This document shows, in pieces, positions 5,329 to 22,992 of a stretch of DNA of 64,000 nt (position 1 is the stretch's first letter; every line of letters starts with the position of its first letter). Where the stretch lies: the NCBI RefSeq assembly GCF_022045235.1, contig NW_027266275.1:28396001-28460000 (forward strand). The letters are read 5' to 3'. Source of the DNA: Haliotis cracherodii (taxonomy: Eukaryota). Below the pieces are notes generated by a model. That model did no database searches. It was not told the origin of the DNA and was given only the letters and a program-made list of their open reading frames with translations. A program made the translations under genes and the position numbers.

Positions 5329-7845
5329 GTGTTTTCATCACACTTTCCAGTGCAATTGTATCTGATTATTTTCAACAGAAATTTAGGAGTGACAGCTTGG
5401 TGCCTTGTGATTGGTTTCAATATAGTGCCCTTGTTGCTCTTGTGAAACGTCCAGCCCCATTCTGTCGCATACATATTGTTGCCTAGCCAGGTCTGCACTT
5501 GGAGTCAGACTCGTTGGCTGGGCAATCTGGCAGCATCTGATGTCGGTGGAAGGTGTCGAAGGGTTAGGTAATTTGAGATTGATAGATACCTTCTCAGTGA
5601 ATTTTGTCACACGTTCAGAATTCAAATCCAAGCCAGGCATACAGCCGCAGAGGATTGCAAGTGCCTGATTACCAGCCTGCTCGATTTCTGCATGGTTTCC
5701 ACCTGTCACCATGAAAACCTTTGAATATTCCTGAGACCATCCCTATGCCATATGGCCTCAATGTTGTGTCGGTCCCTGACAATGCATGTACAAAGAGCAA
5801 AGAATGGCTGAGATTAGGATCAAGGATCATCTGTAGGATGAAGATGTCAGTGATCTTTGTACTTGTCTGAAGAAAGATGGCCTCCAGTTCTTCTCTGATG
5901 GGTCTCATCCTTGGTAAAAAAAACACCTCAATAACCATCAAACACGATAACAGCATTGCAGAAGCGGTTCCTCAAGAAATGAGCCCGCACAGCTTGTGAC
6001 ACAGATTTGCCGGACAACATCTGATCTGTACTACCCTCTGAATATACTTGAGTGATGATCTCCTTTAACCCAGATCCAGCCATCAGATTCCCAACTGTAC
6101 CCACAAAACTCATCTAAGTATGGAATCCCCCCAAGACCAGGGCTATTTGATGCAAGGGGCTCTCAGCTGGCCGTGATTCGAAGATCATGTATGCAATTCA
6201 CCAAAGTTGCTGGTCGATTGTAATAACCGGTGTGATTCCATGTCTTCTGGCATACTCCAGCATTGATCTGACACAGGATTCGTCACATGGTGTCACGTTG
6301 ATAATCAACAAGAATATCTCAGAGCTCTTCCTGGGGTATGGAATGTCAGAATGGAGCAACTGCATGCAACCGGAACACAGTGGTCAACACACACAGAAGT
6401 GGCGCACTCCACAAATTATCTAGTTTGCTATTCTTTTCATCACGACAGAAGTCACCAATTGGTGAATAGATAATGTTCGCCAGCACTGCCTTTGGATTTC
6501 TTTGTGAGAATGGTTTGACACTGTTGATTTTTTTAACATCATCCAAGTCCACCTTAACTCTTGGTACCCTCCGTCTCACCATCTCGCCCATAGCATGGAT
6601 TGAGCCAGTCCCATCAAACCTTTTGCTGGCATGATCTATATAACCAGCCTGGTATTGCACGAATGTATCTGCAATGTCTCTGATTAGGTGAACACCATGA
6701 GTGGTCACCGAGAATTTTCTAAATTTACGAGGAGCTGAAACCGAGTTGGCTTATCATATCCACTAAATTACGATGACCATATATGTGTTATAGTGTGATA
6801 CTTTGTCAAACTTGTCGAGGAGGCAGAAATGATGGGGACATTTCGAATGCATTATTGCCTGACCCAATGACGCAGCTCAGCTCTTGATGATAGCTTGAAG
6901 GAGGATGCGTAATGCATGTGGGAGGTAATCAAGATTGGTGTCAATCAATGCCATCTGCTCATTGTCGAGATACACATCAACATTTTTCTACATGCTCTCT
7001 ACCTGCGTATGAATGTATCCTCCTCCAACTTTAATCAAACTGTCCATGTCGGATTTGTCTACCTTTGCAACATTTTCATATGCCGTAAGAGATGCAATGT
7101 TAGGTTGTTGCCTGATTTGTTATGAATACCTTGTTCCCATAGTGATTCATGAATTCCCTTTTCAGCTGAGATGTAGTGTGTAGTTGATTATCACTCAGTG
7201 CACTCATTGACTTCATAATGTGATGCAAATTGTCCAAAGGAATCGTTTCATCATCATTCTCTTCCAAGTAATAAATGGCAATCTCAAATGCTGTCATCTA
7301 GGACATACACTTCGGTCGACCAAGTCTCCATTTCTTTGGTGGAGCCTCCCCATGTTCAATACATGCTGCAGGTATACTTGTCCCTCTCCGAAAATTCTTA
7401 TCACAAGCATGGTGATGGATAGCTTCTTCAGCTGGTAGATTGTATATGGGCACAATACTTGACTGTACCATCTTGGTCCAATCATCTTGCCTGTTGACAC
7501 AGTATGTTGCAGACATATGTTGAGTAACTGAAGAGCCATCGCAGGGCTGAAGTACACTTCTATATGGATGTTTGTATGCAACATCCTGGTCAATACAAGT
7601 ACTGCATAGAAAACAGTGAGTTTTAAAATTTAAGGCTTTAACATATGATCAAAAGGTTTCAGCTACTTTGATTGCCTTTGAATTTTTATGCATACTTCGA
7701 CACTGTCTGTGTACCAACAGGCTACAGTTGTATATGATGTCTGGTGCATCGAATTTACAGCAGCATTTTGCTGTCAACTTCACATAATCCTGGGGTTTGT
7801 CCAGGTTAACTGGTTCCATACATAGCAAACAAGTCGCCATCTGTG
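5241..7845 (-). pseudogene. Frameshifted Academ transposase / XPG-like nuclease / Cys-rich zinc-finger ORF
   Basis: Collinear minus-strand fragments: MATCLLC..VHRQCR; LPAEEAIHHHAC; [11 protein letters not shown]; FVQY..IDH..FDGTGSIHAMG; ITIDQQLW; LGGFHT*MSFVGTVGNLMAGSGL..MLSGKSVSQAVRAHFL; IVFDGY; LLFVHALSGTDTT; QTWLG..EWGW..LLKIIRYNC..C..CSCR. There are many stops and frameshifts, and an apparent internal deletion near 5960. Confidence 0.8.
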
Positions 7846-9114
7846 ATCTACATAGGACACCTTCAGTTGAGAATAGTCACCTGCGAATAGTAACAGTTGA
7901 TAGAAATATGGTTGACATGTGTCCAGATACAAATGTTGCTTTTCCGATTATAGCAAATGATTTTTGTGCTAAATGTCTTGATTATATCTTCTGAATTAAC
8001 TTTTAATAAAGTTTCTGAGAAGCTAATACCATTTGAGAAAAATAACTGCTTCCCGGAGTTTGGATTATCTCCCTTGATTTTCCTTTAAACAAATGTTGAT
8101 GTTAATTTTAAGGCTCTGTTTCAAATTTTATATTTATATTTGTTCATATTTTCATCAGTTATTCCTCTCTAGAGCCAATCAACTATATATCATACAAGTT
8201 TTCATTTTAGCTATAAAAGAAAAATAGCTTATACATACCTTTATGTTCTTGAGGTCTATCTTTAAGACATTGTATGCTCGGCCGCCATTTTGAAGAAGGG
8301 AATACTTTGGGTTTTTTCAATTATATTTGTTTCTAACTTGATTATTTACGTGAAGACAATAAACTGCATGATTTTATATGCAAAACGTCAACATAATAAT
8401 AAATCGGTTCATGTTCTGCAAGAATTACTGATATTAACAAATTTATTTACTTCTTCGTCATTTTGAAGCATTATTTTAAATTTCTATGTGAATTTTCCTT
8501 TCAAAATTGTTAAATATACATTCTTTTGCATTTATCCTGGCAAGCTAATATAGATAGACTCATCATAAATGGGTTTTTTGTTATTGGTTCCACGTTTATG
8601 ACTATTATTACTTTTGTTGGCGGCCATCTTGGATTTGACCTATTTTCGGATGGTTCCCCATGTCCTATTTTGGTAAACTATTTTTTATTTTAATGTATAG
8701 GTGCCAAGGCACCAAAATCCAGCAATAAACCTTTTCCGTCAATTTTGTTGAACCTAGTCCTTTTAATTACTGGACTAAGAAGGCAACCGAGCCGTGCAAA
8801 TATCTGCCCATACATCTTCCCCCATGGGCATGACATGCCTGGTCGCGTAAGCATTTCAAACATGGTCATTCCTAGACGAGTTTCTCCGAAAGTTGGAAAA
8901 CTGCTCAGCCCCATATTCTACAAACATCTAACCATCTGGAAGTTATCAGAAACAATATGCAGGCTTCAGGCCTCTCCGAATCTGCCTGGTAACATTTGTC
9001 CACCGCCATCTGTGGCAACCGATGGTGTAAGTTCTGCCAACGGAGACGAAGACGAGGATTGGTAGATGGCGTTAAAACGATGCCTATGGTGGTGGATTTC
9101 CTCCACAACACTCT

Positions 9115-9339: not shown

Positions 9340-9472
9340 GTCAGGCGAACAATTGACTTGCCTTTGCACGTGTTTGTGAGAAAGCAAGAGAATTTAAAAA
9401 TCCAGCATTTCTGGGCATTGTTGGAGACTAATGAGCACGTTTTTACTGTGATGGAGCTGGCCGAAGGGGAAC
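9340..9472 (+). pseudogene. Scrambled relics of an older copy of the array kinase
   Basis: 9419-9472 (gttggagactaatgagcacgtttttactgtgatggagctggccgaaggggaac) aligns to the kinase codons for VLETDKHAFTVMELAEGG (10543-10598) with about 6 differences. ~9356-9370 (gacttgcctttgcacg) resembles the DFGLCT codons. Confidence 0.8.
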
Positions 9473-9487
9473 GTAGCTAGTTACCAA

Positions 9488-10270
9488 CTTGACCTTTAAC
9501 CTTTGATCGTCAAGAACCACCAAGAACCACCTTTGATTGTCCAGAATTACAATTACTACATCTCTCCTATTATAAAGTTGACCTTTGACCTTTGATTGTC
9601 CAATGTTGCTGGAATGCAAGTAAAACTAAAATCACAATCACATCGACCTTTTCCTTCATCTCCATTACAAAGTTGACCTTTGACCTTTGATTGTAAAGAA
9701 TCACAATCACATCATAGTTAAAATCAGGCCTCACAATCTCATCCTTCAAATACAAATTTGACCTTTGACCTCTGATTGTCAAGAATCACGAATGACATCG
9801 ACCCTTTCCATCATCTCCATTACAAAGTTGACCTTTGATTGTCAAGAATCACAATTACATAATATAGTTAAAGTTTTGACCTTTGACCTTTGTTTGTAAA
9901 GAATCACAATCGCATCCTCTTCATTACAAATTTGACCTTTGACCTCTGATTGTCAAGAATTACAATCGTAATATCGACCCTTTCACTTCTCGATTACAAA
10001 GTTGACCTTTGACCTTTGATTGTCATCACAACGTCGACCTTTCTATTTTCCAATCACAAAGTTGACCTTTGACCTTTGATTGTTTGCAAGTTGAAACATC
10101 AACAATAGCACTTCCATGACCTTTGGCCTTTCCATTTCCTGTCATTTGCCCCCTTGACCTTTAGAGCACTTGACCTTGAGTCACCTGATGACCGTGGCTT
10201 TGACCTTTGGGTCCCAATGTGTCTTGTTTGACCTTTATGTGCCCTGACCCCAAGAGGTCACATCGTCCGG
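9488..10270 (+). promoter_or_regulatory. Upstream region of copy 1: cluster of DR1 nuclear-receptor elements plus proximal half-sites
   Basis: Seven perfect TGACCTTTGACCT (= AGGTCA-A-AGGTCA on the minus strand); TGACCTTGA at 10171-10179 overlapping TGAGTCA at 10177-10183; everted TGACCC-N4-AGGTCA at 10245-10260. The motifs are seen directly; regulatory function is inferred. Confidence 0.6.
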
Positions 10271-10271
10271 G

Positions 10272-10310
10272 TATAAAAGGAAGAGATCTTCCATTTCCAG
10301 CATTTCATTT
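10272..10310 (+). promoter_or_regulatory. Core promoter of copy 1: TATA box and Inr-like sequence
   Basis: TATAAAAG at 10272, 57 bp upstream of the ATG, with pyrimidine-rich GCATTTCATTT about 30 bp downstream. Confidence 0.8.
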
Positions 10311-10328
10311 CAATATCATTCATCTATC

Positions 10329-11114
10329 ATGTCATCTATTAAGAACGTTTTGCGTTCGATTGGTTACCAAGTTAAATCCCTCTTAGGAGAGGGAAGCTTT
10401 GGTACGGTTTTGCTCTGTGAAAACATGGTTGACCTTTCGGAGGTTGCCATAAAAATCACAGAAAAAGTTCAGAGCTATGTCTCCAATGAGACGTTTGCTC
10501 TGAAGACTGTGAAACATCCCAACATTGTGGACATCTACGCAGTGTTGGAGACTGATAAGCACGCTTTTACTGTGATGGAGCTGGCCGAGGGGGGAAACCT
10601 CCTGGACCTGCTTGCACAGGAAAGCTTTAGCTTGTCTGAGGAGAGAGTCAAGGTGATCTTTTCCCAACTGGTGGAGGCTGTGAACGCCTGTCATCAGGAG
10701 GGGATTGCACACCGAGATCTTAAGCTGGAAAATGTCCTTTTGGACCTGGACGGCAATGTCAAGCTGTCTGACTTTGGCCTTTGCACGCGCCAAGAGCAAA
10801 GAGAGTCCAGTAATACCTTCTGTGGAACTGTAACTTACTCCTCCCCCGAGGTTCTAACCGGAGAGGAGTATGATGCATTCAAGCTAGACATCTGGAGTTT
10901 GGGGGTCATCCTCTATTCTCTGGTGTGTGGCTCCTTCCCCTTTGACGACTTCAGCATCAGCCAGATGGTTCAGCTGCAGAAAGATCACATCCTTCCATTT
11001 CCCGAGCCCATCAGCTCAGAGTGCAAGGATCTTATTCTGCAAATGTGCCAGCCCGATGTTGCTGGAAGGCCCTCTATCAGACAGGTTCAGAACTCTAGCT
11101 GGCTTTGCCAGTGA
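10329..11114 (+). CDS. TSSK1-like: Testis-specific serine/threonine kinase (TSSK1/2-like, CAMK group), copy 1, intronless, 261 aa
   Basis: All catalytic motifs are present: GEGSFG, VAIK (K42), alphaC E54, HRDLKLEN, DFG, TFCGT (T163), SPE and DIWSLGVILY. The C-lobe VCGSFPFDD..QKDH..FP..ECKDLI..QPDV..R..W closely follows vertebrate TSSK1/2. Confidence 0.93.
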   Translation: MSSIKNVLRSIGYQVKSLLGEGSFGTVLLCENMVDLSEVAIKITEKVQSYVSNETFALKTVKHPNIVDIYAVLETDKHAFTVMELAEGGNLLDLLAQESFSLSEERVKVIFSQLVEAVNACHQEGIAHRDLKLENVLLDLDGNVKLSDFGLCTRQEQRESSNTFCGTVTYSSPEVLTGEEYDAFKLDIWSLGVILYSLVCGSFPFDDFSISQMVQLQKDHILPFPEPISSECKDLILQMCQPDVAGRPSIRQVQNSSWLCQ

Positions 11115-11179
11115 AATCTAAAAGCCTAAAAAGCTAATAATATCAATAATAACACATCACACCCTATTAGACAATCAGA

Positions 11180-11900
11180 CTTGAACTTTTGACCTTTGAT
11201 TGTCAAGAATCACACAACATCGACCTTTTCCTTCATCTCCAAAGTTGACCTTTGACCTTTGATCACATCATATCAGTTAAAATGTTGACCTTTGACCTTT
11301 GTTTGTAAAGAATCACAATCTCATCCTTCAATTACAAATTTGACCTTTGACCTCTGATTGTGAAGAATCACGAATGACATCGACCCTTTCCATCATCTCC
11401 AATTACAAAGTTGACCTTTGACCTTTGATTGTCAAGAATCACAATTACATCATATAGTTAAAGTTTTGACCTTTGACCTTTGTTTGTAAAGAATCACAAT
11501 CGCATCCTCTTCATTACAAATTTGACCTTTGACCTCTGATTGTCAAGAATTACAATCGTAATATCGACCCTTTCACTTCTCGAATTACAAAGTTGACCTT
11601 TGACCTTTGATTGTCATCACAACGTCGACCTTTCTATTTTCCAATCACAAAGTTGACCTTTGACCTTTGATTGTTTGCAAGTTGAAACATCAACAATAGC
11701 ACTTCCATGACCTTTGGCCTTTCCATTTCCTGTCATTTGCCCCCTTGACCTTTAGAGCACTTGACCTTGAGTCACCTGATGACCGTGGCTTTGACCTTTG
11801 GGTCCCAATGTGTCTTGTTTGACCTTTATGTGCCCTGACCCCAAGAGGTCACATCGTCCGGGTATAAAAGGAAGAGATCTTCCATTTCCAGCATTTCATT
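11180..11900 (+). promoter_or_regulatory. Spacer/promoter of copy 2: 8 DR1 elements, TATA at 11863
   Basis: Eight perfect TGACCTTTGACCT, the same proximal sites as copy 1, and TATAAAAG at 11863. Confidence 0.65.
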
Positions 11901-11919
11901 TCAATATCATTCATCTATC

Positions 11920-12705
11920 ATGTCATCTATTAAGAACGTTTTGCGTTCGATTGGTTACCAAGTTAAATCCCTCTTAGGAGAGGGAAGCTTTGGTACGGTT
12001 TTGCTCTGTGAAAACATGGTTGACCTTTCGGAGGTTGCCATAAAAATCACAGAAAAAGTTCAGAGCTATGTCTCCAATGAGACGTTTGCTCTGAAGACTG
12101 TGAAACATCCCAACATTGTGGACATCTACGCAGTGTTGGAGACTGATAAGCACGCTTTTACTGTGATGGAGCTGGCCGAGGGGGGAAACCTCCTGGACCT
12201 GCTTGCACAGGAAAGCTTTAGCTTGTCTGAGGAGAGAGTCAAGGTGATCTTTTCCCAACTGGTGGAGGCTGTGAACGCCTGTCACCAGGAGGGGATTGCA
12301 CACCGAGATCTTAAGCTGGAAAATGTCCTTTTGGACCTGGACGGCAATGTCAAGCTGTCTGACTTTGGCCTTTGCACGCGCAAAGAGCAAAGAGAGTCCA
12401 GTAATACCTTCTGTGGAACTGTAACTTACTCCTCCCCCGAGGTTCTAACCGGAGAGGAGTATGATGCATTCAAGCTAGACATCTGGAGTTTGGGGGTCAT
12501 CCTCTATTCTCTGGTGTGTGGCTCCTTCCCCTTTGACGACTTCAGCATCAGCCAGATGGTTCAGCTGCAGAAAGATCACATCCTTCCATTTCCCGAGCAC
12601 ATCAGCTCAGAGTGCAAGGATCTTATTCTGCAAATGTGCCAGCCCGATGTTGCTGGAAGGCCCTCTATCAGACAGGTTCAGAACTCTAGCTGGCTTTGCC
12701 AGTGA
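11920..12705 (+). CDS. TSSK1-like: TSSK1/2-like kinase, copy 2 (Q155K, P227H)
   Basis: Intact 261-aa ORF with two substitutions relative to copies 1 and 5. Confidence 0.93.
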   Translation: MSSIKNVLRSIGYQVKSLLGEGSFGTVLLCENMVDLSEVAIKITEKVQSYVSNETFALKTVKHPNIVDIYAVLETDKHAFTVMELAEGGNLLDLLAQESFSLSEERVKVIFSQLVEAVNACHQEGIAHRDLKLENVLLDLDGNVKLSDFGLCTRKEQRESSNTFCGTVTYSSPEVLTGEEYDAFKLDIWSLGVILYSLVCGSFPFDDFSISQMVQLQKDHILPFPEHISSECKDLILQMCQPDVAGRPSIRQVQNSSWLCQ

Positions 12706-12769
12706 AATCTAAAAGCCTAAAAAGCTAATAATATCAATAATAACACATCACACCCTATTAGACAATCAG

Positions 12770-13497
12770 ACTTGAACTTTTGACCTTTGATTGTCAAGAA
12801 TCACAATCACAACATCGACCTTTTCCTTCATCTCCAAAGTTGACCTTTGACCTTTGATCACATCATATCATAGTTAAAATGTTGACCTTTGACCTTTGTT
12901 TGTCAAGAATCACAAACTCATCCTTCAATTACAAATTTGACCTTTGACCTCTGATTGTCAAGAATCACGAATGACATCGACCCTTTCCACCATCTCCAAT
13001 TACAAAGTTGACCTTTGACCTTTGATTGTCAAGAATCACAATCACATCATATAGTTAAAGTTTTGACCTTTGACCTTTGTTTGTAAAGAATCACAATCGC
13101 ATCCTCTTCATTACAAATTTGACCTTTGACCTCTGATTGTCAAGAATTACAATCGTAATATCGACCCTTTCACTTCTCGATTACAAAGTTGACCTTTGAC
13201 CTTTGATTGTCATCACAACGTCGACCTTTCTATTTTCCAATCACAAAGTTGACCTTTGACCTTTGATTGTTTGCAAGTTGAAACATCAACAATAGCACTT
13301 CCATGACCTTTGGCCTTTCCATTTCCTGTCATTTGCCCCCTTGACCTTTAGAGCACTTGACCTTGAGTCACCTGATGACCGTGGCTTTGACCTTTGGGTC
13401 CCAATGTGTCTTGTTTGACCTTTATGTGCCCTGACCCCAAGAGGTCACATCGTCCGGGTATAAAAGGAAGAGATCTTCCATTTCCAGCATTTCATTT
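12770..13497 (+). promoter_or_regulatory. Spacer/promoter of copy 3: 8 DR1 elements, TATA at 13459
   Basis: Eight perfect DR1 and TATAAAAG at 13459. Confidence 0.65.
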
Positions 13498-13515
13498 CAA
13501 TATCATTCATCTATC

Positions 13516-14301
13516 ATGTCATCTATTAAGAACGTATTGCGTTCGATTGGTTACCAAGTTAAATCCCTCTTAGGAGAGGGAAGCTTTGGTACGGTTTTGC
13601 TCTGTGAAAACATGGTTGACCTTTCGGAGGTTGCCATAAAAATCACAGAAAAAGTTCAGAGCTATGTCTCCAATGAGACGTTTGCTCTGAAGACTGTGAA
13701 ACATCCCAACATTGTGGACATCTACGCAGTGTTGGAGACTGATAAGCACGCTTTTACTGTGATGGAGCTGGCCGAGGGGGGAAACCTCCTGGACCTGCTT
13801 GCACAGGAAAGCTTTAGCTTGTCTGAGGAGAGAGTCAAGGTGATCTTTTCCCAACTGGTGGAGGCTGTGAACGCCTGTCACCAGGAGGGGGTTGCACACC
13901 GAGATCTTAAGCTGGAAAATGTCCTTTTGGACCTGGACGGCAATGTCAAGCTGTCTGACTTTGGCCTTTGCACGCGCCAAGAGCAAAGAGAGTCCAGTAA
14001 TACCTTCTGTGGAACTGTAACTTACTCCTCCCCCGAGGTTCTAACCGGAGAGGAGTATGATGCATTCAAGCTAGACATCTGGAGTTTGGGGGTCATCCTC
14101 TATTCTCTGGTGTGTGGCTCCTTCCCCTTTGACGACTTCAGCATCAGCCAGATGGTTCAGCTGCAGAAAGATCACATCCTTCCATTTCCCGAGCCCATCA
14201 GCTCAGAGTGCAAGGATCTTATTCTGCAAATGTGCCAGCCCGATGTTGCTGGAAGGCCCTCTATCAGACAGGTTCAGAACTCTAGCTGGCTTTGCCAGTG
14301 A
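13516..14301 (+). CDS. TSSK1-like: TSSK1/2-like kinase, copy 3 (I126V)
   Basis: Intact 261-aa ORF. Confidence 0.93.
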   Translation: MSSIKNVLRSIGYQVKSLLGEGSFGTVLLCENMVDLSEVAIKITEKVQSYVSNETFALKTVKHPNIVDIYAVLETDKHAFTVMELAEGGNLLDLLAQESFSLSEERVKVIFSQLVEAVNACHQEGVAHRDLKLENVLLDLDGNVKLSDFGLCTRQEQRESSNTFCGTVTYSSPEVLTGEEYDAFKLDIWSLGVILYSLVCGSFPFDDFSISQMVQLQKDHILPFPEPISSECKDLILQMCQPDVAGRPSIRQVQNSSWLCQ

Positions 14302-14364
14302 AATCTAAAAGCCTAAAAAGCTAATAATATCAATAATAACATCACACCCTATTAGACAATCAGA

Positions 14365-15090
14365 CTTGAACTTTTGACCTTTGATTGTCAAGAATCACAA
14401 TCACAACATCGACCTTTTCCTTCATCTCCAAAGTTGACCTTTGACCTTTGATCACATCATATCATAGTTAAAATGTTGACCTTTGACCTTTGTTTGTCAA
14501 GAATCACAATCTCATCCTTCATTACAAATTTGACCTTTGACCTCTGATTGTCAAGAATCACGAATGACATCGACCCTTTCCATCATCTCCAATTACAAAG
14601 TTGACCTTTGACCTTTGATTGTCAAGAATCACAATTACATCATATAGTTAAAGTTTTGACCTTTGACCTTTGTTTGTAAAGAATCACAATCGCATCCTCT
14701 TATTACAAATTTGACCTTTGACCTTTGATTGTCAAGAATTACAATCGTAATATCGACCCTTTCACTTCTCGAATTACAAAGTTGACCTTTGACCTTTGAT
14801 TGTCATCACAACGTCGACCTTTCTATTTTCCAATCACAAAGTTGACTTTTGACCTTTGATTGTTTGCAAGTTGAAACATCAACAATAGCACTTCCATGAC
14901 CTTTGGCCTTTCCATTTCCTGTCATTTGCCCCCTTGACCTTTAGAGCACTTGACCTTGAGTCACCTGATGACCGTGGCTTTGACCTTTGGGTCCCAATGT
15001 GTCTTGTTTGACCTTTATGTGCCCTGACCCCAAGAGGTCACATCGTCCGGGTATAAAAGGAAGAGATCTTCCATTTCCAGCATTTCATAT
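14365..15090 (+). promoter_or_regulatory. Spacer/promoter of copy 4: 7 perfect and 1 variant DR1, TATA at 15052
   Basis: The last DR1 reads TGACTTTTGACCT. TATAAAAG is at 15052 and the leader has a 6-bp deletion. Confidence 0.65.
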
Positions 15091-15102
15091 CATTCATCTA
15101 TC

Positions 15103-15888
15103 ATGTCATCTATTAAGAACGTTTTGCGTTCGATTGGTTACCAAGTTAAATCCCTCTTAGGAGAGGGAAGCTTTGGTACGGTTTTGCTCTGTGAAAACAT
15201 GGTTGACCTTTCGGAGGTTGCCATAAAAATCACAGAAAAAGTTCAGAGCTATGTCTCCAATGAGACGTTTGCTCTGAAGACTGTGAAACATCCCAACATT
15301 GTGGACATCTACGCAGTGTTGGAGACTGATAAGCACGCTTTTACTGTGATGGAGCTGGCCGAGGGGGGAAACCTCCTGGACCTGCTTGCACAGGAAAGCT
15401 TTAGCTTGTCTGAGGAGAGAGTCAAGGTGATCTTTTCCCAACTGGTGGAGGCTGTGAACGCCTGTCACCAGGTGGGGATTGCACACCGAGATCTTAAGCT
15501 GGAAAATGTCCTTTTGGACCTGGACGGCAATGTCAAGCTGTCTGACTTTGGCCTTTGCACGCGCCAAGAGCAAAGAGAGTCCAGTAATACCTTCTGTGGA
15601 ACTGTAACTTACTCCTCCCCCGAGGTTCTAACCGGAGAGGAGTATGATGCATTCAAGCTAGACATCTGGAGTTTGGGGGTCATCCTCTATTCTCTGGTGT
15701 GTGGCTCCTTCCCCTTTGACGACTTCAGCATCAGCCAGATGGTTCAGCTGCAGAAAGATCACATCCTTCCATTTCCCGAGCCCATCAGCTCAGAGTGCAA
15801 GGATCTTATTCTGCAAATGTGCCAGCCCGATGTTGCTGGAAGGCCCTCTATCAGACAGGTTCAGAACTCTAGCTGGCTTTGCCAGTGA
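15103..15888 (+). CDS. TSSK1-like: TSSK1/2-like kinase, copy 4 (E124V)
   Basis: Intact 261-aa ORF. Confidence 0.93.
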   Translation: MSSIKNVLRSIGYQVKSLLGEGSFGTVLLCENMVDLSEVAIKITEKVQSYVSNETFALKTVKHPNIVDIYAVLETDKHAFTVMELAEGGNLLDLLAQESFSLSEERVKVIFSQLVEAVNACHQVGIAHRDLKLENVLLDLDGNVKLSDFGLCTRQEQRESSNTFCGTVTYSSPEVLTGEEYDAFKLDIWSLGVILYSLVCGSFPFDDFSISQMVQLQKDHILPFPEPISSECKDLILQMCQPDVAGRPSIRQVQNSSWLCQ

Positions 15889-15953
15889 AATCTAAAAGCC
15901 TAAAAAGCTAATAATATCAATAATAACACATCACACCCTATTAGACAATCAGA

Positions 15954-16678
15954 CTTGAACTTTTGACCTTTGATTGTCAAGAATCACAATCACAACATCG
16001 ACCTTTTCCTTCATCTCCAAAGTTGACCTTTGACCTTTGATCACATCATATCATAGTTAAAATGTTGACCTTTGACCTTTGTTTGTCAAGAATCACAAAC
16101 ATCCTTCAATTACAAATTTGACCTTTGACCTCTGATTGTCAAGAATCACGAATGACATCGACCCTTTCCACCATCTCCAATTACAAAGTTGACCTTTGAC
16201 CTTTGATTGTCAAGAATCACAATCACATCATATAGTTAAAGTTTTGACCTTTGACCTTTGTTTGTAAAGAATCACAATCGCATCCTCTTCATTACAAATT
16301 TGACCTTTGACCTCTGATTGTCAAGAATTACAATCGTAATATCGACCCTTTCACTTCTCGATTACAAAGTTGACCTTTGACCTTTGATTGTCATCACAAC
16401 GTCGACCTTTCTATTTTCCAATCACAAAGTTGACCTTTGACCTTTGATTGTTTGCAAGTTGAAACATCAACAATAGCACTTCCATGACCTTTGGCCTTTC
16501 CATTTCCTGTCATTTGCCCCCTTGACCTTTAGAGCACTTGACCTTGAGTCACCTGATGACCGTGGCTTTGACCTTTGGGTCCCAATGTGTCTTGTTTGAC
16601 CTTTATGTGCCCTGACCCCAAGAGGTCACATCGTCCGGGTATAAAAGGAAGAGATCTTCCATTTCCAGCATTTCATTT
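15954..16678 (+). promoter_or_regulatory. Spacer/promoter of copy 5: 8 DR1 elements, TATA at 16640
   Basis: Eight perfect DR1 and TATAAAAG at 16640. Confidence 0.65.
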
Positions 16679-16696
16679 CAATATCATTCATCTATC

Positions 16697-17482
16697 ATGT
16701 CATCTATTAAGAACGTATTGCGTTCGATTGGTTACCAAGTTAAATCCCTCTTAGGAGAGGGAAGCTTTGGTACGGTTTTGCTCTGTGAAAACATGGTTGA
16801 CCTTTCGGAGGTTGCCATAAAAATCACAGAAAAAGTTCAGAGCTATGTCTCCAATGAGACGTTTGCTCTGAAGACTGTGAAACATCCCAACATTGTGGAC
16901 ATCTACGCAGTGTTGGAGACTGATAAGCACGCTTTTACTGTGATGGAGCTGGCCGAGGGGGGAAACCTCCTGGACCTGCTTGCACAGGAAAGCTTTAGCT
17001 TGTCTGAGGAGAGAGTCAAGGTGATCTTTTCCCAACTGGTGGAGGCTGTGAACGCCTGTCACCAGGAGGGGATTGCACACCGAGATCTTAAGCTGGAAAA
17101 TGTCCTTTTGGACCTGGACGGCAATGTCAAGCTGTCTGACTTTGGCCTTTGCACGCGCCAAGAGCAAAGAGAGTCCAGTAATACCTTCTGTGGAACTGTA
17201 ACTTACTCCTCCCCCGAGGTTCTAACCGGAGAGGAGTATGATGCATTCAAGCTAGACATCTGGAGTTTGGGGGTCATCCTCTATTCTCTGGTGTGTGGCT
17301 CCTTCCCCTTTGACGACTTCAGCATCAGCCAGATGGTTCAGCTGCAGAAAGATCACATCCTTCCATTTCCCGAGCCCATCAGCTCAGAGTGCAAGGATCT
17401 TATTCTGCAAATGTGCCAGCCCGATGTTGCTGGAAGGCCCTCTATCAGACAGGTTCAGAACTCTAGCTGGCTTTGCCAGTGA
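16697..17482 (+). CDS. TSSK1-like: TSSK1/2-like kinase, copy 5 (protein identical to copy 1)
   Basis: Intact 261-aa ORF. Confidence 0.93.
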   Translation: MSSIKNVLRSIGYQVKSLLGEGSFGTVLLCENMVDLSEVAIKITEKVQSYVSNETFALKTVKHPNIVDIYAVLETDKHAFTVMELAEGGNLLDLLAQESFSLSEERVKVIFSQLVEAVNACHQEGIAHRDLKLENVLLDLDGNVKLSDFGLCTRQEQRESSNTFCGTVTYSSPEVLTGEEYDAFKLDIWSLGVILYSLVCGSFPFDDFSISQMVQLQKDHILPFPEPISSECKDLILQMCQPDVAGRPSIRQVQNSSWLCQ

Positions 17483-17545
17483 AATCTAAAAGCCTAAAAA
17501 GCTAATAATATCAATAATAACATCACACCCTATTAGACAATCAGA

Positions 17546-18271
17546 CTTGAACTTTTGACCTTTGATTGTCAAGAATCACAATCACAACATCGACCTTTTC
17601 CTTCATCTCCAAAGTTGACCTTTGACCTTTGATCACATCATATCATAGTTAAAATGTTGACCTTTGACCTTTGTTTGTCAAGAATCACAATCTCATCCTT
17701 CATTACAAATTTGACCTTTGACCTCTGATTGTCAAGAATCACGAATGACATCGACCCTTTCCATCATCTCCAATTACAAAGTTGACCTTTGACCTTTGAT
17801 TGTCAAGAATCACAATTACATCATATAGTTAAAGTTTTGACCTTTGACCTTTGTTTGTAAAGAATCACAATCGCATCCTCTTATTACAAATTTGACCTTT
17901 GACCTTTGATTGTCAAGAATTACAATCGTAATATCGACCCTTTCACTTCTCGAATTACAAAGTTGACCTTTGACCTTTGATTGTCATCACAACGTCGACC
18001 TTTCTATTTTCCAATCACAAAGTTGACTTTTGACCTTTGATTGTTTGCAAGTTGAAACATCAACAATAGCACTTCCATGACCTTTGGCCTTTCCATTTCC
18101 TGTCATTTGCCCCCTTGACCTTTAGAGCACTTGACCTTGAGTCACCTGATGACCGTGGCTTTGACCTTTGGGTCCCAATGTGTCTTGTTTGACCTTTATG
18201 TGCCCTGACCCCAAGAGGTCACATCGTCCGGGTATAAAAGGAAGAGATCTTCCATTTCCAGCATTTCATTT
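17546..18271 (+). promoter_or_regulatory. Spacer/promoter of copy 6: 7 perfect and 1 variant DR1, TATA at 18233
   Basis: Same variant pattern as the spacer before copy 4. TATAAAAG is at 18233. Confidence 0.65.
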
Positions 18272-18289
18272 CAATATCATTCATCTATC

Positions 18290-19075
18290 ATGTCATCTAT
18301 TAAGAACGTTTTGCGTTCGATTGGTTACCAAGTTAAATCCCTCTTAGGAGAGGGAAGCTTTGGTACGGTTTTGCTCTGTGAAAACATGGTTGACCTTTCG
18401 GAGGTTGCCATAAAAATCACAGAAAAAGTTCAGAGCTATGTCTCCAATGAGACGTTTGCTCTGAAGACTGTGAAACATCCCAACATTGTGGACATCTACG
18501 CAGTGTTGGAGACTGATAAGCACGCTTTTACTGTGATGGAGCTGGCCGAGGGGGGAAACCTCCTGGACCTGCTTGCACAGGAAAGCTTTAGCTTGTCTGA
18601 GGAGAGAGTCAAGGTGATCTTTTCCCAACTGGTGGAGGCTGTGAACGCCTGTCACCAGGTGGGGATTGCACACCGAGATCTTAAGCTGGAAAATGTCCTT
18701 TTGGACCTGGACGGCAATGTCAAGCTGTCTGACTTTGGCCTTTGCACGCGCCAAGAGCAAAGAGAGTCCAGTAATACCTTCTGTGGAACTGTAACTTACT
18801 CCTCCCCCGAGGTTCTAACCGGAGAGGAGTATGATGCATTCAAGCTAGACATCTGGAGTTTGGGGGTCATCCTCTATTCTCTGGTGTGTGGCTCCTTCCC
18901 CTTTGATGACTTCAGCATCAGCCAGATGGTTCAGCTGCAGAAAGATCACATCCTTCCATTTCCCGAGCCCATCAGCTCAGAGTGCAAGGATCTTATTCTG
19001 CAAATGTGCCAGCCCGATGTTGCTGGAAGGCCCTCTATCAGACAGGTTCAGAACTCTAGCTGGCTTTGCCAGTGA
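18290..19075 (+). CDS. TSSK1-like: TSSK1/2-like kinase, copy 6 (E124V)
   Basis: Intact 261-aa ORF; protein identical to copy 4. Confidence 0.93.
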   Translation: MSSIKNVLRSIGYQVKSLLGEGSFGTVLLCENMVDLSEVAIKITEKVQSYVSNETFALKTVKHPNIVDIYAVLETDKHAFTVMELAEGGNLLDLLAQESFSLSEERVKVIFSQLVEAVNACHQVGIAHRDLKLENVLLDLDGNVKLSDFGLCTRQEQRESSNTFCGTVTYSSPEVLTGEEYDAFKLDIWSLGVILYSLVCGSFPFDDFSISQMVQLQKDHILPFPEPISSECKDLILQMCQPDVAGRPSIRQVQNSSWLCQ

Positions 19076-19139
19076 AATCTAAAAGCCTAAAAAGCTAATA
19101 ATATCAATAATAACACATCACACCCTATTAGACAATCAG

Positions 19140-19720
19140 ACTTGAACTTTTGACCTTTGATTGTCAAGAATCACAATCACAACATCGACCTTTTCCTTCA
19201 TCTCCAAAGTTGACCTTTGACCTTTGATCACATCATATCATAGTTAAAATGTTGACCTTTGACCTTTGTTTGTCAAGAATCACAAACATCCTTCAATTAC
19301 AAATTTGACCTTTGACCTCTGATTGTCAAGAATCACGAATGACATCGACCCTTTCCACCATCTCCAATTACAAAGTTGACCTTTGACCTTTGATTGTCAA
19401 GAATCACAACCACATCATATAGTTAAAGTTTTGACCTTTGACCTTTGTTTGTAAAGAATCACAATCGCATCCTCTTCATTACAAATTTGACCTTTGACCT
19501 CTGATTGTCAAGAATTACAATCGTAATATCGACCCTTTCACTTCTCGAATTACAAAGTTGACCTTTGACCTTTGATTGTCATCACAACGTCGACCTTTCT
19601 ATTTTCCAATCACAAAGTTGACCTTTGACCTTTGATTGTTTGCAAAGTTGACCATTGACCAAGAATCACAATCACATCATATTGTTAAAATGACCGATTG
19701 CAAGTTGAACATCGACATTA
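19140..19720 (+). repeat. Terminal DR1 spacer with no downstream core promoter or gene
   Basis: Eight perfect DR1 subrepeats are followed by diverged subrepeats at 19645-19720, with no TATA box or ORF after them. Confidence 0.9.
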
Positions 19721-19876
19721 CTACTACCCTTGTTCACTGTAGAGTTGCGTCGCTTAGTTGGGGTGTTTTTTCCACGGATTTCTGCGAATGAACAAACTAC
19801 GTCGCGGGAGTTTTACGGGACTCGCGACGTCAGCGCGTGGGGGAACATATGGCATTCATCAGAAATGTACAAGTCT

Positions 19877-19956
19877 TGCACAATGTTACTAAGATACTAG
19901 GAGTTTGTTCTTTATTCAGATAGAACAAACTCCTAGTATCTTAGTAACATTGTGCA
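19877..19956. repeat. Perfect inverted repeat: 35-bp arms, 10-nt loop
   Basis: TGCACAATGTTACTAAGATACTAGGAGTTTGTTCT (19877-19911), loop TTATTCAGAT, exact reverse complement at 19922-19956. Confidence 0.97.
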
Positions 19957-21812
19957 GGAGACCTGCAAGTTAGTCGATATCAAGAAGACACAAACAACAA
20001 GTTTTCACCCATGCTGCATTGGCCAGAGTGAGAGGATGATGTCAACAATCTTGTAACGGGATGACGAATGACCGCACCCAAGAGCGAGAGAGATGATACA
20101 ATCAGTATTTGGAAGAAAATGTACAGTTGATCGACATTGAAGATTGTGAAAATAAGCGGGAATATCCACCTGTGCATTTAAATCGTTCCAACCACATACA
20201 TTCAAATTTACTACAAAATGTACTCCGTTTTGCTACGCTACATCAGCTTCCAAAAGTAGGAGAGATATGAAAATCGGTATTGGAAGTAAAGCTACAGAAA
20301 AGATACGACAGCCCGTTCGCGGAACTCTCTATACTAAAAAGTGTAACGAAGGTATCACGCGTTAGGAAGGAGCTTGGACATTCTGAGTATGAAGGGAGAT
20401 AACTCTGTCAACCTTACTACTTCAAAGTCGTAGGCTCTGTGAAGCGTAACGATTTTTAATTCACTTGATGCCACACTGCCTTGTCAGCTCTTTCTGTGAT
20501 CATCCAGGCGTATCTGATAACACACTGACACAACAACAATGTCATCTGCGGTAGTCAGCCGCTTTATAGCACCGTGCAAACACAACCCATATTGCGCCAA
20601 TCTCCGCGAGGGTCCAGAGCGAGCTAATGGGATTTGAGTGTATTTGTCTTTATGTCTGCATGACGTATGCTCTATGCCGTATGCGACCCTCATTGACAAC
20701 CAGCAATCAATTTGTTCGTATTTAAAAAAATGTTTTTGAGCATCTGATATCTTTTGAGGTGCTGTAATATTATTCTTAATGAATAAATGTTTACGAAAAT
20801 CCACTACGATTTAATGTTTGACTGTGTAATTGTCTATGACAACAACGACTACACGACGAAGTACATTGATAGGGAGCGGGTTGGTATTATAGTTTGGTGT
20901 CTGATATCTCTTGAGTAAAATAGAAACTTTGAAACTAAGGTTCCTGACGTAAATGGTTAATGAAATAGACATTTTAACGACTAATATTTCTGTTCATAAG
21001 AATGTCTATTTCTGTCTATTTCTCTACATGTGTAGAATCCCAATTCGATACGGTACTTGGTGTTATTTATACGAGTATACAATAATGAAAACACAACGTG
21101 CCAAACATGAAATTTGTTAGTATCTAATATATTAATATATAAATGTGTGTTGTTAGGCAGGATATAATTTGATCGGTTTTGAGGTTCCACAGAAAACCAT
21201 CTTCAATCTTGACCGATAAGAATGTCACATCCTGGAGACAACGCATCAATTAAAACCCCTCATGACATCAGTGTACTCATTGGTCGAAATACCAGTTGTT
21301 CATAAGAATCCTGCTTATCACAATCCTGCTTGCAGTGGATGTATTTCACTTCAATGTCATCAAACGCACGTTTTGGTGTGGGAAATGGATATCAAATCTT
21401 TCGTATGATCCACCCGACTGTTTTTCGTTTCAATAGAAATTAAATGTTCATTTCAACATCGGATCAAGGGAATCACTTTCATTATGATCTAACAGTACAC
21501 GGATTAATGCAGTGGCCCCTCAGTAGAAATGGACTCGCCTTCATTAATGTATCAGCTATTCTTGGAGATTATGGTCTTTAACTCGATTATGCACTTTAAT
21601 AAACATGTAACTGCAAGTGTTTTAAAGTCGATTAAAATCTCATAATAAATTTTCAGGTCACTCTGCTGGTGCCATTCAATTACTATGAAAGCAGAAATCG
21701 ATACACCCTACGCCACATGCGGTTTCGTCTGACGGTCGAGCAATCCCAATGTGGTCCAGACAGCATTGCTTGTCGTCACGACGATAGTACCTCTCCAAAG
21801 TTTATGTCAATA

Positions 21813-21905
21813 ATGGCGACTTCCCCACTCACGCTGTTGCTGAGGCGAAATATAGGAAAACATTTCGTACGGAAAAAAGTGCGACCTTTACTAAGCAACT
21901 TCAGG
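21813..21905 (+). CDS. Probable first coding exon of a downstream gene; peptide resembles a mitochondrial presequence (MATSPLTLLLRRNIGKHFVRKKVRPLLSNFR)
   Basis: ataATGG Kozak context in a locally CpG-rich region, 31 codons rich in R/K/L/S with no acidic residue, ending at an AGG|gtaagg donor. Downstream exons were not identified. Confidence 0.5.
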
Positions 21906-22850
21906 GTAAGGACAATATGTTTTATTTGATGCAAAATGCAACTTGTATCCACTGTCAGTGCGTTTCATATGAAGTTTGGTTCGCTGTCCGGCGACTGTTT
22001 CGCTGGATCAAGCTGCTTCTTGCCAACCGATATTCGGCAACTGTAAATGACTTGAGTTCGCGTGAAGTATTGTGACATTTGTTGCAATATCTACGTGTAT
22101 GTGAGCGTTCCCTCTAAGATATTTTCAAATACTGCTGTCCCGTACATGCAATGCAGTTTTGTCAAAATGGGCGGTGTCAAATCCTCTGCTTCAGCACATT
22201 AATGGAATGTATACCTTGAACTTACCTGTGCATTCCTGGATCATATAAAAGTATCACCGTCGGTTAGATATAGTGCACTACCTACTACTTGGTTATTTAA
22301 TACACTGTTGCAAATTTGTAATAATTTCAATATTCATGTATTATTACAAATTTTGCCTCAATGTATATAGCAATATAAACTGATGTTTGGAAATAAACGT
22401 AAACAGCTATGAAAGGTCTGGCTACTAAGGACATGTGATAACATGGGCATGATGAAATGTATCACAGCAGGTGCATCAGAGATTAACAACATCTTTTGGT
22501 TGCTGCTTATATTTGCCAGTGATCTTGTAGTTTTGTTATGAATGGACATTTCTTAATTCAGCCATAGATGTCTCTTCATTTGACATTAATACATGCTACA
22601 GTGTAAGGTTGTCATTGTTTTTTTCCAGATGACAGGCCACTATCCAGAAGAATAAGTATCATGTGATATGCCTGTTCAGTATAAATGTACTTTTTAGTCT
22701 CTGACCTCAGCCACTATTCTGAAGCCCAATGTTTATAAAATTTGGACTTGTTTGGATGTGTAAAGAGCCAAGTTGGGGCTGTGATAAGTTCTAAGTGCAT
22801 TGTCCATTGAAGACTGTTCGCCAAATGATTCAATTATAGATAAGGCTCCA

Positions 22851-22992
22851 TTCAGCCAATTGTGTGGATTGATCATGTTGATGCTCATGATGTCAATCAC
22901 TGGATTGTCTGGTCCAGACTTGATTATTTACAGACCGCCATCATATAGCTGGAATATTGCTGAGTGCGGCGTTAAACAACAAACAAACAAAA
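22851..22992 (+). mobile_element. 3' part of SINE-like family A
   Basis: gatgctcatgatgtcaatcactggattgtctggtccagac..gctggaatattgctgagtgcggcgttaaacaac followed by an (AAAC)n tail. Matches 44795-45060. Confidence 0.85.

What the first reader, a model, noticed from the sequence alone, without database searches (positions are those of the whole stretch)
9488..19720. Amplicon of six self-contained, intronless TSSK-like kinase cassettes, each with its own DR1-rich spacer and TATA promoter
Seen: six head-to-tail ~1.59 kb units, each laid out as DR1-rich spacer, TATA/Inr, ~25-30 nt leader and an intact 261-aa kinase; I find only 7 variable sites among the CDSs. Established: the protein is closest to TSSK1/2, post-meiotic male germline CAMK-group kinases that are usually low-copy and often intronless. 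Homogeneous tandem arrays are typical of histone, rDNA and ampliconic testis genes, and amplified sperm kinases (mouse t-haplotype Smok) and Stellate-type arrays are linked to transmission distortion. Inference: this is a recently amplified, dosage-boosted germline kinase module, a candidate for sperm competition or a drive/suppressor system. I know of no description of this architecture, but I cannot search the literature.
Basis: partly seen in the sequence, partly recalled or inferred. Interest (0 to 1): 0.9.

Follow-up and report, generated by a model that had tools for sequence, protein, structure and literature searches.

The report
Six-copy abalone TSSK-family kinase gene array
A black abalone chromosome carries six nearly identical, intact, intron-free copies of a small sperm-type (TSSK-family) kinase gene, and related molluscs also keep this gene in many near-identical copies. 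No data here show where it is expressed or link it to transmission distortion.

Summary
Six head-to-tail units of about 1.59 kb (window 9524-19075, plus a seventh partial spacer to 19651) each hold an intact 261-aa kinase ORF. The six CDSs differ at exactly 7 sites. Each unit has one TATA context and 7-8 perfect, co-oriented DR1 motifs.

The genome is Haliotis cracherodii. The proteins are already in NCBI's collection, but I found no paper describing the array.

A careful tree puts the kinase inside the clade of all named TSSKs (support 100/99), in a mollusc-only subclade (95/91). Pairwise scores alone cannot separate it from SNRK or MARK.

The same gene is multi-copy and 97.6-99.4% identical within each of H. 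rufescens, H. asinina, Sinanodonta and Tegillarca, yet only 41-82% identical between distant species. This fits homogenisation or recurrent amplification.

The spacer and its DR1 cluster occur nowhere else in the genome.

Testis expression, read-based copy number and any drive role remain untested.

It also noted an unrelated kinase array elsewhere in this genome.

Verdict: a real, tidy, lineage-specific tandem gene family. Moderately interesting, not a demonstrated drive module.

The parts
9415..9469 (+). Relic fragment of a kinase CDS (nt 211-265), 91% identical, just upstream of the array: a decayed edge copy
   Evidence: blastn of the CDS against the window
9524..10328 (+). Spacer 1: the diverged edge copy of the 805-nt spacer, with 7 DR1 motifs and TATA at 10272
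10329..11114 (+). Kinase gene copy 1 (261 aa, intact)
11115..11919 (+). Spacer 2: short 3' flank, then a 55/181-bp minisatellite with 8 perfect DR1 (TGACCTTTGACCT), then a half-site-rich proximal promoter with TATA at 11863
   Evidence: The spacer is unique to this locus in the genome
11920..12705 (+). Kinase gene copy 2 (Q155K, P227H)
12706..13515 (+). Spacer 3 (8 DR1, TATA at 13459)
13516..14301 (+). Kinase gene copy 3 (I126V)
14302..15102 (+). Spacer 4 (7 DR1, TATA at 15052, 6-nt deletion in the leader)
15103..15888 (+). Kinase gene copy 4 (E124V)
15889..16696 (+). Spacer 5 (8 DR1, TATA at 16640). Unit 5 is nearly identical to unit 3
16697..17482 (+). Kinase gene copy 5 (protein identical to copy 1)
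17483..18289 (+). Spacer 6 (7 DR1, TATA at 18233). Unit 6 is nearly identical to unit 4
18290..19075 (+). Kinase gene copy 6 (E124V)
19076..19651 (+). Seventh, truncated spacer (first 571 of 805 nt, 97% identical, 8 DR1) with no gene behind it. It fades into degenerate spacer-like sequence up to about 19730
6500..8778 (.). Young high-copy transposable element just upstream. It is not part of the array, but it bounds it and makes this flank unusable as a single-copy reference
   Evidence: 94-100% identical copies on many contigs, 3193 first-look candidates

Best explanation
This is a tandem gene family in the black abalone, Haliotis cracherodii. It consists of six functional copies of a short, kinase-domain-only, intronless Ser/Thr kinase. 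The kinase belongs to a mollusc-specific branch of the TSSK (testis-specific serine kinase) family.

Each 1.59-kb unit looks like a complete gene. It has an upstream minisatellite carrying 7-8 co-oriented perfect DR1 nuclear-receptor-type sites, a half-site-rich proximal promoter with a TATA box about 60 nt before the ATG, and the 786-nt ORF.

The array grows and is kept uniform by unequal crossing-over or gene conversion between units. The last event duplicated a two-unit block. The edge copies have decayed. All six copies share derived bases that a dispersed older copy and sister species lack.

Shown here: the array, intact catalytic motifs, purifying selection between species, TSSK-clade placement, multi-copy homogeneity in other molluscs, and uniqueness of the spacer.

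Inferred: the copies raise transcript dosage of a kinase needed in bulk, most likely in spermatids (by analogy with every mollusc TSSK examined so far), and the DR1 cluster is a homotypic enhancer bound by an NR2-type receptor (HNF4, RXR, COUP-TF or TR2/4).
For: - Six intact ORFs differing at 7 sites.
- Pkinase domain at E 2.9e-68. GxGxxG, VAIK, HRDLKLEN, DFG, the T-loop Thr and SPE are all present. The N-terminal VLRSxGY and C-lobe QPDV motifs are shared with TSSK1/2/6 but not with SNRK.
- Careful ML tree: TSSK clade including the array at 100/99, mollusc subclade at 95/91.
- Units 3/5 and 4/6 are nearly identical, which indicates a dimer duplication.
- Decayed edges.
- The solo copy 115 kb away keeps ATC236, CGA251 and CGG254, as the sister-species contigs do, while all six array copies share ATT, AGA and CAG.
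- Listed differences to sister-species contigs are 5 syn/4 nonsyn and 9 syn/3 nonsyn over 174 S and 609 N sites, giving omega of about 0.1-0.25.
- H. rufescens has at least 5 gene models and H. asinina 7, each set about 99% identical internally. Sinanodonta and Tegillarca have runs of consecutive locus tags with 97.6-98.5% identical copies.
- The spacer occurs only at this locus. 28 of the genome's 53 copies of the 17-mer DR1 core lie in the array, and the rest are singletons.
- The assembly was made from 37x HiFi reads averaging 15.7 kb, longer than the 10.2-kb array (PMC9709981).
- Scallop and abalone TSSKs studied so far are testis- or spermatid-predominant (PMC8042308, PMC6905558).
Against: - There is no expression evidence. 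No listed holder run is on record as RNA. Three RNA-like runs of the same species hold none of the unit's words. The 'RNA?' contigs of relatives also contain spacer and flank, so they look like DNA.
- No canonical polyadenylation signal lies within 400 nt after the stop.
- Pairwise similarity to SNRK and to the unlabelled long kinases in the set equals that to TSSK1/2.
- AU tests do not reject the array as sister to all other TSSKs (p 0.51) and only nearly reject it outside TSSK plus the nearest sister group (p 0.079).
- DR1 sites of this exact form are classic HNF4/RXR sites, which would fit gut or digestive-gland expression as well as testis.
- Copy number was not verified with reads; the one raw-read run was uninformative.
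Confidence: 0.72

Rival explanations
1. The same functional tandem kinase family, but expressed somatically rather than in the male germline. For example, it could be expressed in digestive gland or gut under HNF4/RXR-type control of the DR1 cluster. The 'testis-specific' label would then be only a name inherited from homology.
For: - The repeated element, read on the other strand, is AGGTCAAAGGTCA, the generic HNF4/RXR/COUP-TF DR1 (the motif assignment is from established knowledge).
- The clade sits on a long branch (1.0 substitutions per site) away from characterised TSSKs.
- No RNA data were obtained.
Against: - All five scallop Tssk genes and the abalone TSSK1-like gene are testis- or spermatid-predominant.
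- TR2/TR4-type receptors that bind DR1 are also germ-cell factors (my own knowledge).
- Three RNA-like runs of this species lack the gene, which fits restricted expression, but their tissues are unknown.
Confidence: 0.15
2. A selfish or conflict-driven amplicon: a meiotic-drive, drive-suppressor or sperm-competition module. The amplified kinase and perhaps the kinase-dead solo copy 115 kb away would act like Smok/Tcr in the mouse t haplotype.
For: - Very recent amplification and high homogeneity.
- TSSK-family membership.
- An in-frame, catalytic-loop-deleted but still open 172-aa copy lies on the same chromosome.
- The clade has a fast-evolving stem.
Against: - There are no data on segregation, sex linkage, copy-number polymorphism or expression.
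- The same multi-copy state in gastropods and two bivalve orders points to an ordinary, long-lived property of the family rather than a species-specific conflict.
- Coding sequence is under purifying, not positive, selection between close species.
- The solo copy has lost its promoter beyond -21, and its omega of about 0.4 fits decay.
Confidence: 0.05
3. A young, neutral segmental amplification with no function of its own: silent or redundant copies on their way to decay. Alternatively, an assembly over-expansion of fewer real copies.
For: - Copies differ by less than the species' 1.56% heterozygosity.
- There is no canonical poly(A) signal.
- There is no RNA evidence.
- In one relative's contigs, CDS depth equals flank depth (12 against 9-12), as if the gene were single-copy there.
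Against: - All six ORFs and promoters are intact, while the edge copies and the solo copy have decayed.
- Omega is well under 1 between species.
- The multi-copy state recurs in five mollusc genomes.
- Copies carry distinct SNPs and indels, and HiFi reads of about 15.7 kb can span the array.
- The unit is held by runs from three studies of the same species label.
Confidence: 0.08

Closest known systems
TSSK family (TSSK1-6 of vertebrates; Tssk1/2, 3, 4, 5 and 7 of scallop; TSSK1-like of Haliotis discus hannai)
   Same: - CAMK-group kinase domain with all catalytic motifs.
- Falls inside the clade of named TSSKs.
- Short, kinase-domain-only architecture like TSSK3/6.
- Intronless, like mammalian TSSKs and scallop Tssk3/Tssk7.
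- Shared VLRSxGY and QPDV motifs.
   Different: - Only 38-43% identical to any named TSSK, on a long stem branch.
- Belongs to a mollusc-only subclade.
- Present as six 99.5% identical tandem copies rather than one or two genes.
- Expression is unknown.
- The characterised abalone TSSK1-like gene is a different, four-exon gene.
Classical homogenised tandem gene arrays (histone clusters, 5S rDNA, ampliconic testis genes)
   Same: - Compact head-to-tail units, each with its own promoter.
- Within-genome identity far above between-species identity.
- Decayed edge units.
- A higher-order (two-unit) duplication.
   Different: - Only six units, encoding a signalling enzyme rather than a bulk structural product.
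- The spacer is a locus-specific minisatellite of nuclear-receptor-type sites.
Mouse t-haplotype Smok/Tcr and Drosophila Stellate/Su(Ste)
   Same: - An amplified kinase (or kinase-subunit) gene of a sperm-associated family.
- A truncated relative lies nearby.
   Different: - No evidence of drive, inversions, a fusion gene, an antisense or piRNA partner, or sex linkage.
- Smok is MARK-related, not TSSK (my own knowledge).
Short kinases of Sinanodonta woodiana, Potamilus streckersoni and Tegillarca granosa ('hypothetical protein', protein kinase domain-containing)
   Same: - Nearest relatives outside Haliotis (41-48% identity, subclade support 95/91).
- Also kinase-domain-only.
- Also present as many near-identical copies with consecutive locus tags on one chromosome.
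   Different: They are unnamed and unstudied. Their unit structure and spacers could not be fetched here.

Membership tests
Eukaryotic protein kinase (Pfam PF00069), catalytically competent | Full kinase domain with Gly loop, VAIK Lys, alpha-C Glu, HRD...N, DFG and APE-type motif | tested here: met
   Pkinase residues 13-259 at E 2.9e-68. GEGSFG at 20, VAIK at 39, HRDLKLEN at 128, DFG at 148, SPE at 172. All are conserved in all six copies.
TSSK family | Groups with named TSSKs to the exclusion of other CAMKL kinases (SNRK, SIK, MARK-like, CIPK/SNF1-like) | tested here: met
   Careful IQ-TREE run, 56 rows: a 34-row clade holding all named TSSKs plus the array has UFBoot 100 / SH-aLRT 99 (quick tree gave 99). 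Metazoan MARK and AMPK references could not be obtained as sequences. SNRK, SIK3, a 'MARK2-like' protein and fungal and plant relatives served as non-TSSK rows.
TSSK family | The data reject placement outside the TSSK clade | tested here: inconclusive
   AU test: forcing the array outside TSSK plus the nearest sister group costs 21 lnL units, p 0.079. The array as sister to all other TSSKs is not rejected, p 0.51. Pairwise bit scores to SNRK (191.5) and TSSK1/2 (180-198) overlap.
TSSK family | Testis-restricted, post-meiotic expression | tested here: inconclusive
   No holder run is on record as RNA, and three RNA-like runs of the species hold none of it. Contigs of relatives include spacer and flank and so look like DNA.
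TSSK family | Small protein consisting essentially of the kinase domain (as in TSSK3/6) | tested here: met
   261 aa, with the domain spanning 13-259 and no other Pfam domain.
Homogenised tandem gene array (concerted evolution) | Paralogues within a genome are more alike than orthologues between species, with derived states shared by all copies | tested here: met
   Within-species identity is 97.6-99.4%; H. asinina against H. cracherodii is 82% and Haliotis against bivalves 41-48%. All six copies share ATT236, AGA251 and CAG254, whereas the solo copy and sister-species contigs have ATC, CGA and CGG. Independent recent amplification from one copy in each species would give the same pattern.
Homogenised tandem gene array (concerted evolution) | Copy number confirmed by spanning reads or read depth | tested here: inconclusive
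   The raw-read run X21 gave 23 partial reads and no flank coverage. Indirect support only: HiFi reads averaging 15.7 kb at 37x and distinct SNPs and indels per copy.
Meiotic drive / suppressor amplicon (Smok-Tcr, Stellate type) | Transmission distortion, or linkage to a distorter, inversion or sex chromosome | not testable with these tools
   No cross, population or sex-specific data are available.
Nuclear-receptor DR1 response-element cluster | Perfect AGGTCA-n1-AGGTCA repeats enriched far above chance at the locus | tested here: met
   53 perfect sites in the window, all in the array and all co-oriented, with none outside. There are 20-22 TGACCT half-sites per 805-nt spacer, against an expectation of about 0.2. 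Genome-wide, 28 of 53 copies of the 17-mer core lie here, and the reversed control gives 67.
Nuclear-receptor DR1 response-element cluster | Bound by a receptor and required for transcription | not testable with these tools
   Needs EMSA or DAP-seq and reporter assays. The multiplicity itself comes from minisatellite duplication (55/181-bp periods), so it need not reflect selection on each site.

The most novel reading that the evidence does not exclude
A mollusc-specific branch of the TSSK family has existed as a homogenised tandem array since before gastropods and bivalves split. It would be maintained by concerted evolution like histone or 5S genes, because spermatids (or another cell type) need it in bulk. 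In abalone each unit would be driven by a private minisatellite enhancer of nuclear-receptor DR1 sites. Copy number would then be a variable, selectable dosage trait in broadcast-spawning molluscs.
Probability: 0.25. Interest if true: 0.6.

Novelty: new member of a known kind. Interest (0 to 1): 0.38.

Why it matters
If the copies are expressed in spermatids, this is a compact, natural example of dosage amplification of a signalling enzyme in a broadcast spawner. Abalone are a classic model for fast-evolving fertilisation proteins. The recurrence of the same multi-copy, within-genome-uniform state in gastropods and in two bivalve orders makes it a usable case for studying concerted evolution of a protein-coding array outside histones and rDNA.

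The unit is small enough (1.6 kb, with promoter, enhancer-like repeat and ORF) to test in reporter assays. Seven copy-diagnostic CDS sites would let RNA-seq resolve which copies are active. For conservation genomics of the endangered black abalone, it is also a locus where short-read mapping and copy-number calls will mislead.

It does not, on present evidence, bear on meiotic drive.

Tried and rejected
- The look-up of encoding contigs, tried to fetch the H. asinina locus, was closed. Unit structure and spacers in other species therefore could not be compared.
- The look-up of sequencing runs and read laying gave little:
  - The only raw-read DNA run (X21) gave 23 partially fitting reads and no flank coverage, so there is no copy-number estimate.
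  - The 'RNA?' contigs X15-X17 carry spacer and unique flank, and they break at the minisatellite rather than at transcript ends. I read them as DNA or read-through, not as proof of transcription.
  - CDS against flank depth (51 against 3-5 in X16; 12 against 9-12 in X17) is noted only as a hint of copy-number difference between relatives.
- The first tree, which included long-branch paralogues, left the backbone unresolved. I rebuilt it without them.
- The search of protein representatives was dominated by multi-kinase fusion models, which were useless for ranking. The single-domain hits were usable as tree rows.
- Rows I first labelled 'SIK-like' turned out to group with a fungal kinase.
- Pfam accessory domains labelled only one reference, SIK3.
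- PDB searches to label paralogues L012, L013 and L015 returned nothing at the thresholds I set. L014 was identified as SNRK.
- The bacterial promoter/terminator scan is irrelevant to a eukaryote.
- I rejected the idea that the spacer is a genome-wide satellite or transposable element, because it is unique to this locus.
- I rejected retrotransposon or virus carriage, because the units have no such hallmarks and the adjacent transposable element is a separate insertion.

Full report
**1. Observation**

The window holds six + strand ORFs of exactly 261 aa, starting at 10329, 11920, 13516, 15103, 16697 and 18290. No other ORF over 166 aa exists in the 64 kb.
- The six CDSs differ at exactly 7 positions, 3 synonymous and 4 non-synonymous. 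This gives four distinct proteins.
- Aligned as whole units (spacer plus CDS), units 2-6 differ by 7-9 mismatches in about 1590 nt.
- Units 3/5 and units 4/6 differ by a single mismatch plus a few gapped positions. The most recent event therefore duplicated a two-unit block.
- Unit 1 has a more diverged spacer.
- A 55-nt relic of CDS nt 211-265 lies at 9415-9469.
- After copy 6 comes a seventh spacer, truncated at 571 of 805 nt (19076-19651).
- Decayed edges and a uniform interior are what unequal exchange produces.

**2. Unit anatomy**

- The context GGGTATAAAAGGAAGAG occurs exactly six times, 60 nt before each ATG. In unit 4 it is 54 nt, because of a 6-nt deletion.
- The proximal 270 nt are identical in units 1, 2, 3 and 5.
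- Upstream lies a minisatellite with 55-bp and 181-bp periods. It carries 7-8 perfect TGACCTTTGACCT elements per unit.
- That makes 53 in the window, all inside the array, all on the + strand, none elsewhere.
- Each spacer has 20-22 TGACCT half-sites against one in each CDS.
- Read on the other strand, the element is AGGTCAAAGGTCA, the generic DR1 of NR2-type nuclear receptors. This assignment is established knowledge, not tested here.
- No AATAAA or ATTAAA occurs within 400 nt after any stop codon, only two AATAAT.
- The transcription start and the short leader are inferences from the TATA position.

**3. Organism and prior annotation**

[quoted passage not shown] It sits on the same 82.36-Mb contig.
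- The genome size (1.18 Gb in 80 contigs) matches the published black abalone assembly. That assembly used 37x PacBio HiFi reads with a mean length of 15.7 kb, and reports 1.56% heterozygosity (PMC9709981).
- The four distinct array proteins are already in the NCBI/UniRef collection.
- Reads of that length can span the 10.2-kb array, and each copy has its own SNPs and indels. An assembly artefact is therefore unlikely, but I could not test it with reads.

**4. Uniqueness in the genome**

- A six-frame search finds the six copies and one further close copy at C12:28,529,063-28,529,578 on the minus strand, about 115 kb beyond the array. The next paralogue is only 37% identical.
- The solo copy is an open 172-aa frame with an in-frame loss of residues 87-174, which contain HRD, DFG and the activation loop. 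It has no homology to the array promoter beyond -21.
- The 805-nt spacer matches only this locus and the solo copy's 3' flank.
- The 17-mer TGACCTTTGACCTTTGA occurs 53 times in 1.18 Gb. Of these, 28 are in the array and the rest are singletons. The reversed control occurs 67 times.
- The spacer is therefore not a genome-wide satellite or transposable element.
- The upstream flank (at least 6500-8778) is a separate, very young high-copy transposable element.
- The downstream flank 19652-22880 is unique.

**5. What the protein is**

- Pfam gives a full Pkinase domain (residues 13-259, E 2.9e-68) and nothing else. All catalytic motifs are intact.
The large word-indexed search sees only proteins of 144-457 aa, so MARK, AMPK and SNRK were excluded by length.
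- Against solved structures the best hits are SNRK (191.5 bits), MARK (177), AMPK (166) and TSSK6 (153). TSSK1/2 score 180-198.
- BLASTP against labelled references gives 38-43% identity to TSSK, to SNRK and to other long kinases alike.
- I therefore built trees. The first, with long-branch paralogues, was unresolved.
- After removing those rows and adding SNRK (including the abalone orthologue L014, identified), SIK3 and other unbiased HMMER hits, the careful IQ-TREE tree gave two supported clades:
  - A 34-row clade containing every named TSSK plus the array (UFBoot 100 / SH-aLRT 99).
  - Inside it, an 8-row mollusc clade (95/91). It holds the Haliotis array proteins, the H. cracherodii paralogue L013, and short kinases of Sinanodonta, Potamilus, Tegillarca and an unnamed ENA source.
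- AU tests are softer. The array as sister to all other TSSKs is not rejected (p 0.51). The array outside TSSK plus its nearest sister group costs 21 lnL units (p 0.079).
- The alignment shows the N-terminal VLRSxGY and C-lobe QPDV motifs shared with TSSK1/2/6 but not with SNRK.
- I accept family membership, on a long (1.0 substitutions per site), mollusc-specific branch.

**6. The family is multi-copy elsewhere**

- The 90% identity cluster of the array protein also holds at least five H. rufescens gene models.
- H. asinina has seven models that are 98.5-100% identical to each other and 82% identical to ours.
- An H. rubra model runs from the C-terminal half of one copy into the N-terminal part of another. 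That is what a gene predictor produces on head-to-tail copies.
- The bivalve relatives behave the same way:
  - Sinanodonta woodiana has ACJMK2_039705 to 039710 plus 039259.
  - Tegillarca granosa has KUTeg_013803 to 013812 plus four more. In each species, all copies lie on one chromosome-scale contig.
- Within-species identity is 97.6-99.4%. Between Haliotis and bivalves it is 41-48%.
- Inside H. cracherodii, all six copies share ATT236, AGA251 and CAG254. The solo copy and the contigs of two sister taxa have ATC, CGA and CGG.
- This is the signature of homogenisation, or of recent re-expansion from one copy in each lineage. The data do not separate the two.

**7. Constraint**

- The differences that read laying listed between copy 6 and the contigs of two relatives are 5 synonymous/4 non-synonymous and 9 synonymous/3 non-synonymous.
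- Over 174 synonymous and 609 non-synonymous sites, this gives omega of roughly 0.1-0.25.
- The list may be incomplete, so this is indicative only. It fits a working protein.
- The solo copy shows 5 synonymous and 7 non-synonymous differences (omega about 0.4), which is compatible with decay.

**8. Expression and copy number: not resolved**

- No holder run is on record as RNA. Three RNA-like runs under the same species label hold none of the unit's words.
- Contigs of the 'RNA?' runs X15-X17 extend about 250 nt upstream of the TATA box and into the 3' spacer, and they break at the minisatellite. They also cover the unique flank.
- That is how DNA, or read-through transcription, would look. 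It is not how a discrete mRNA would look.
- The raw-read run X21 laid only 23 partial reads, with no flank coverage.
- The unit is held by DNA-type runs from three studies of the species label, and at lower share by three other organism labels.

**9. Literature**

- The characterised abalone TSSK1-like gene is a different, four-exon gene with testis expression (PMC6905558).
- An H. discus hannai study finds Tssk genes among the top male-biased gonad transcripts (PMC11989308).
- In bay scallop all five Tssk genes, two of them intronless, are expressed in spermatids and spermatozoa (PMC8042308).
- Searches for TSSK together with tandem duplication, tandem arrays, expansion or concerted evolution in molluscs found no description of this array.

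**10. Reading**

The best-supported account is an ordinary but unusually tidy lineage-specific tandem gene family.
- It consists of six working copies of a mollusc-specific, kinase-domain-only TSSK, kept uniform by unequal exchange.
- Each copy has its own TATA promoter and a private DR1-rich minisatellite that may act as a homotypic nuclear-receptor enhancer.
- Spermatid expression is a reasonable prior from the family, but it is unproven. The DR1 motif would fit HNF4-type somatic control equally well.
- Nothing here speaks for drive. The recurrence of the multi-copy state across two mollusc classes argues for a long-standing dosage property rather than a species-specific conflict.
I score 0.38.

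Noticed in passing
G000:C12:28529063-28529581 (-), loci L007/L009; about 115 kb beyond the array, outside the window: A solo copy of the kinase gene with an in-frame deletion of residues 87-174 (HRD, DFG, activation loop), leaving an open 172-aa frame. It is 97% and 94% identical to the array in its two parts, has no promoter homology beyond -21, and keeps ancestral bases that the array has lost.
   Followed up: partly
window 6500-8778 (extends further left): A very young, high-copy transposable element: 94-100% identical copies of about 2.28 kb on many contigs, with 3193 first-look candidates. It is inserted about 700 nt upstream of the array edge.
   Followed up: partly
window 19780-19960: Just past the array end there is a GC-rich palindromic stretch, then an 86-nt near-perfect hairpin (19874-19959; arms 91% complementary in the self-match). 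This may be a MITE-like element or a breakpoint structure.
   Followed up: no
window 1106-2533; 32725-33899; 34973-35349; 42926-43238; 51023-51506; 59980-60203: Several unrelated minisatellites: 56-bp x25 with a 434-bp higher order, 83-bp x14 at 94% match, 43-bp x9, a G-rich 22/40-bp repeat, 60-bp x7, and a TAGGTG-type 6/30/54-bp repeat.
   Followed up: no
G000:C78:4628402 and C78:3296945 (L024, L028); G000:C45:14258677 and 14265664 (L029, L010): Other TSSK-like or related kinase paralogues in this genome also come in close pairs. L024 and L028 are nearly identical in the tree, and L029 and L010 lie 7 kb apart.
   Followed up: no
Proteins P0235-P0241 and others: Many top HMMER hits are predicted proteins of 1400-2900 aa with 4-10 kinase-domain matches. 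They are probably gene models fused across tandem kinase arrays in other genomes.
   Followed up: no
Read laying, runs X16 and X17 on window 18200-22800: CDS contig depth relative to the unique flank differs between two relatives: about 51 against 3-5 in one, and about 12 against 9-12 in the other. If these runs are DNA, copy number differs strongly between closely related abalone taxa.
   Followed up: no
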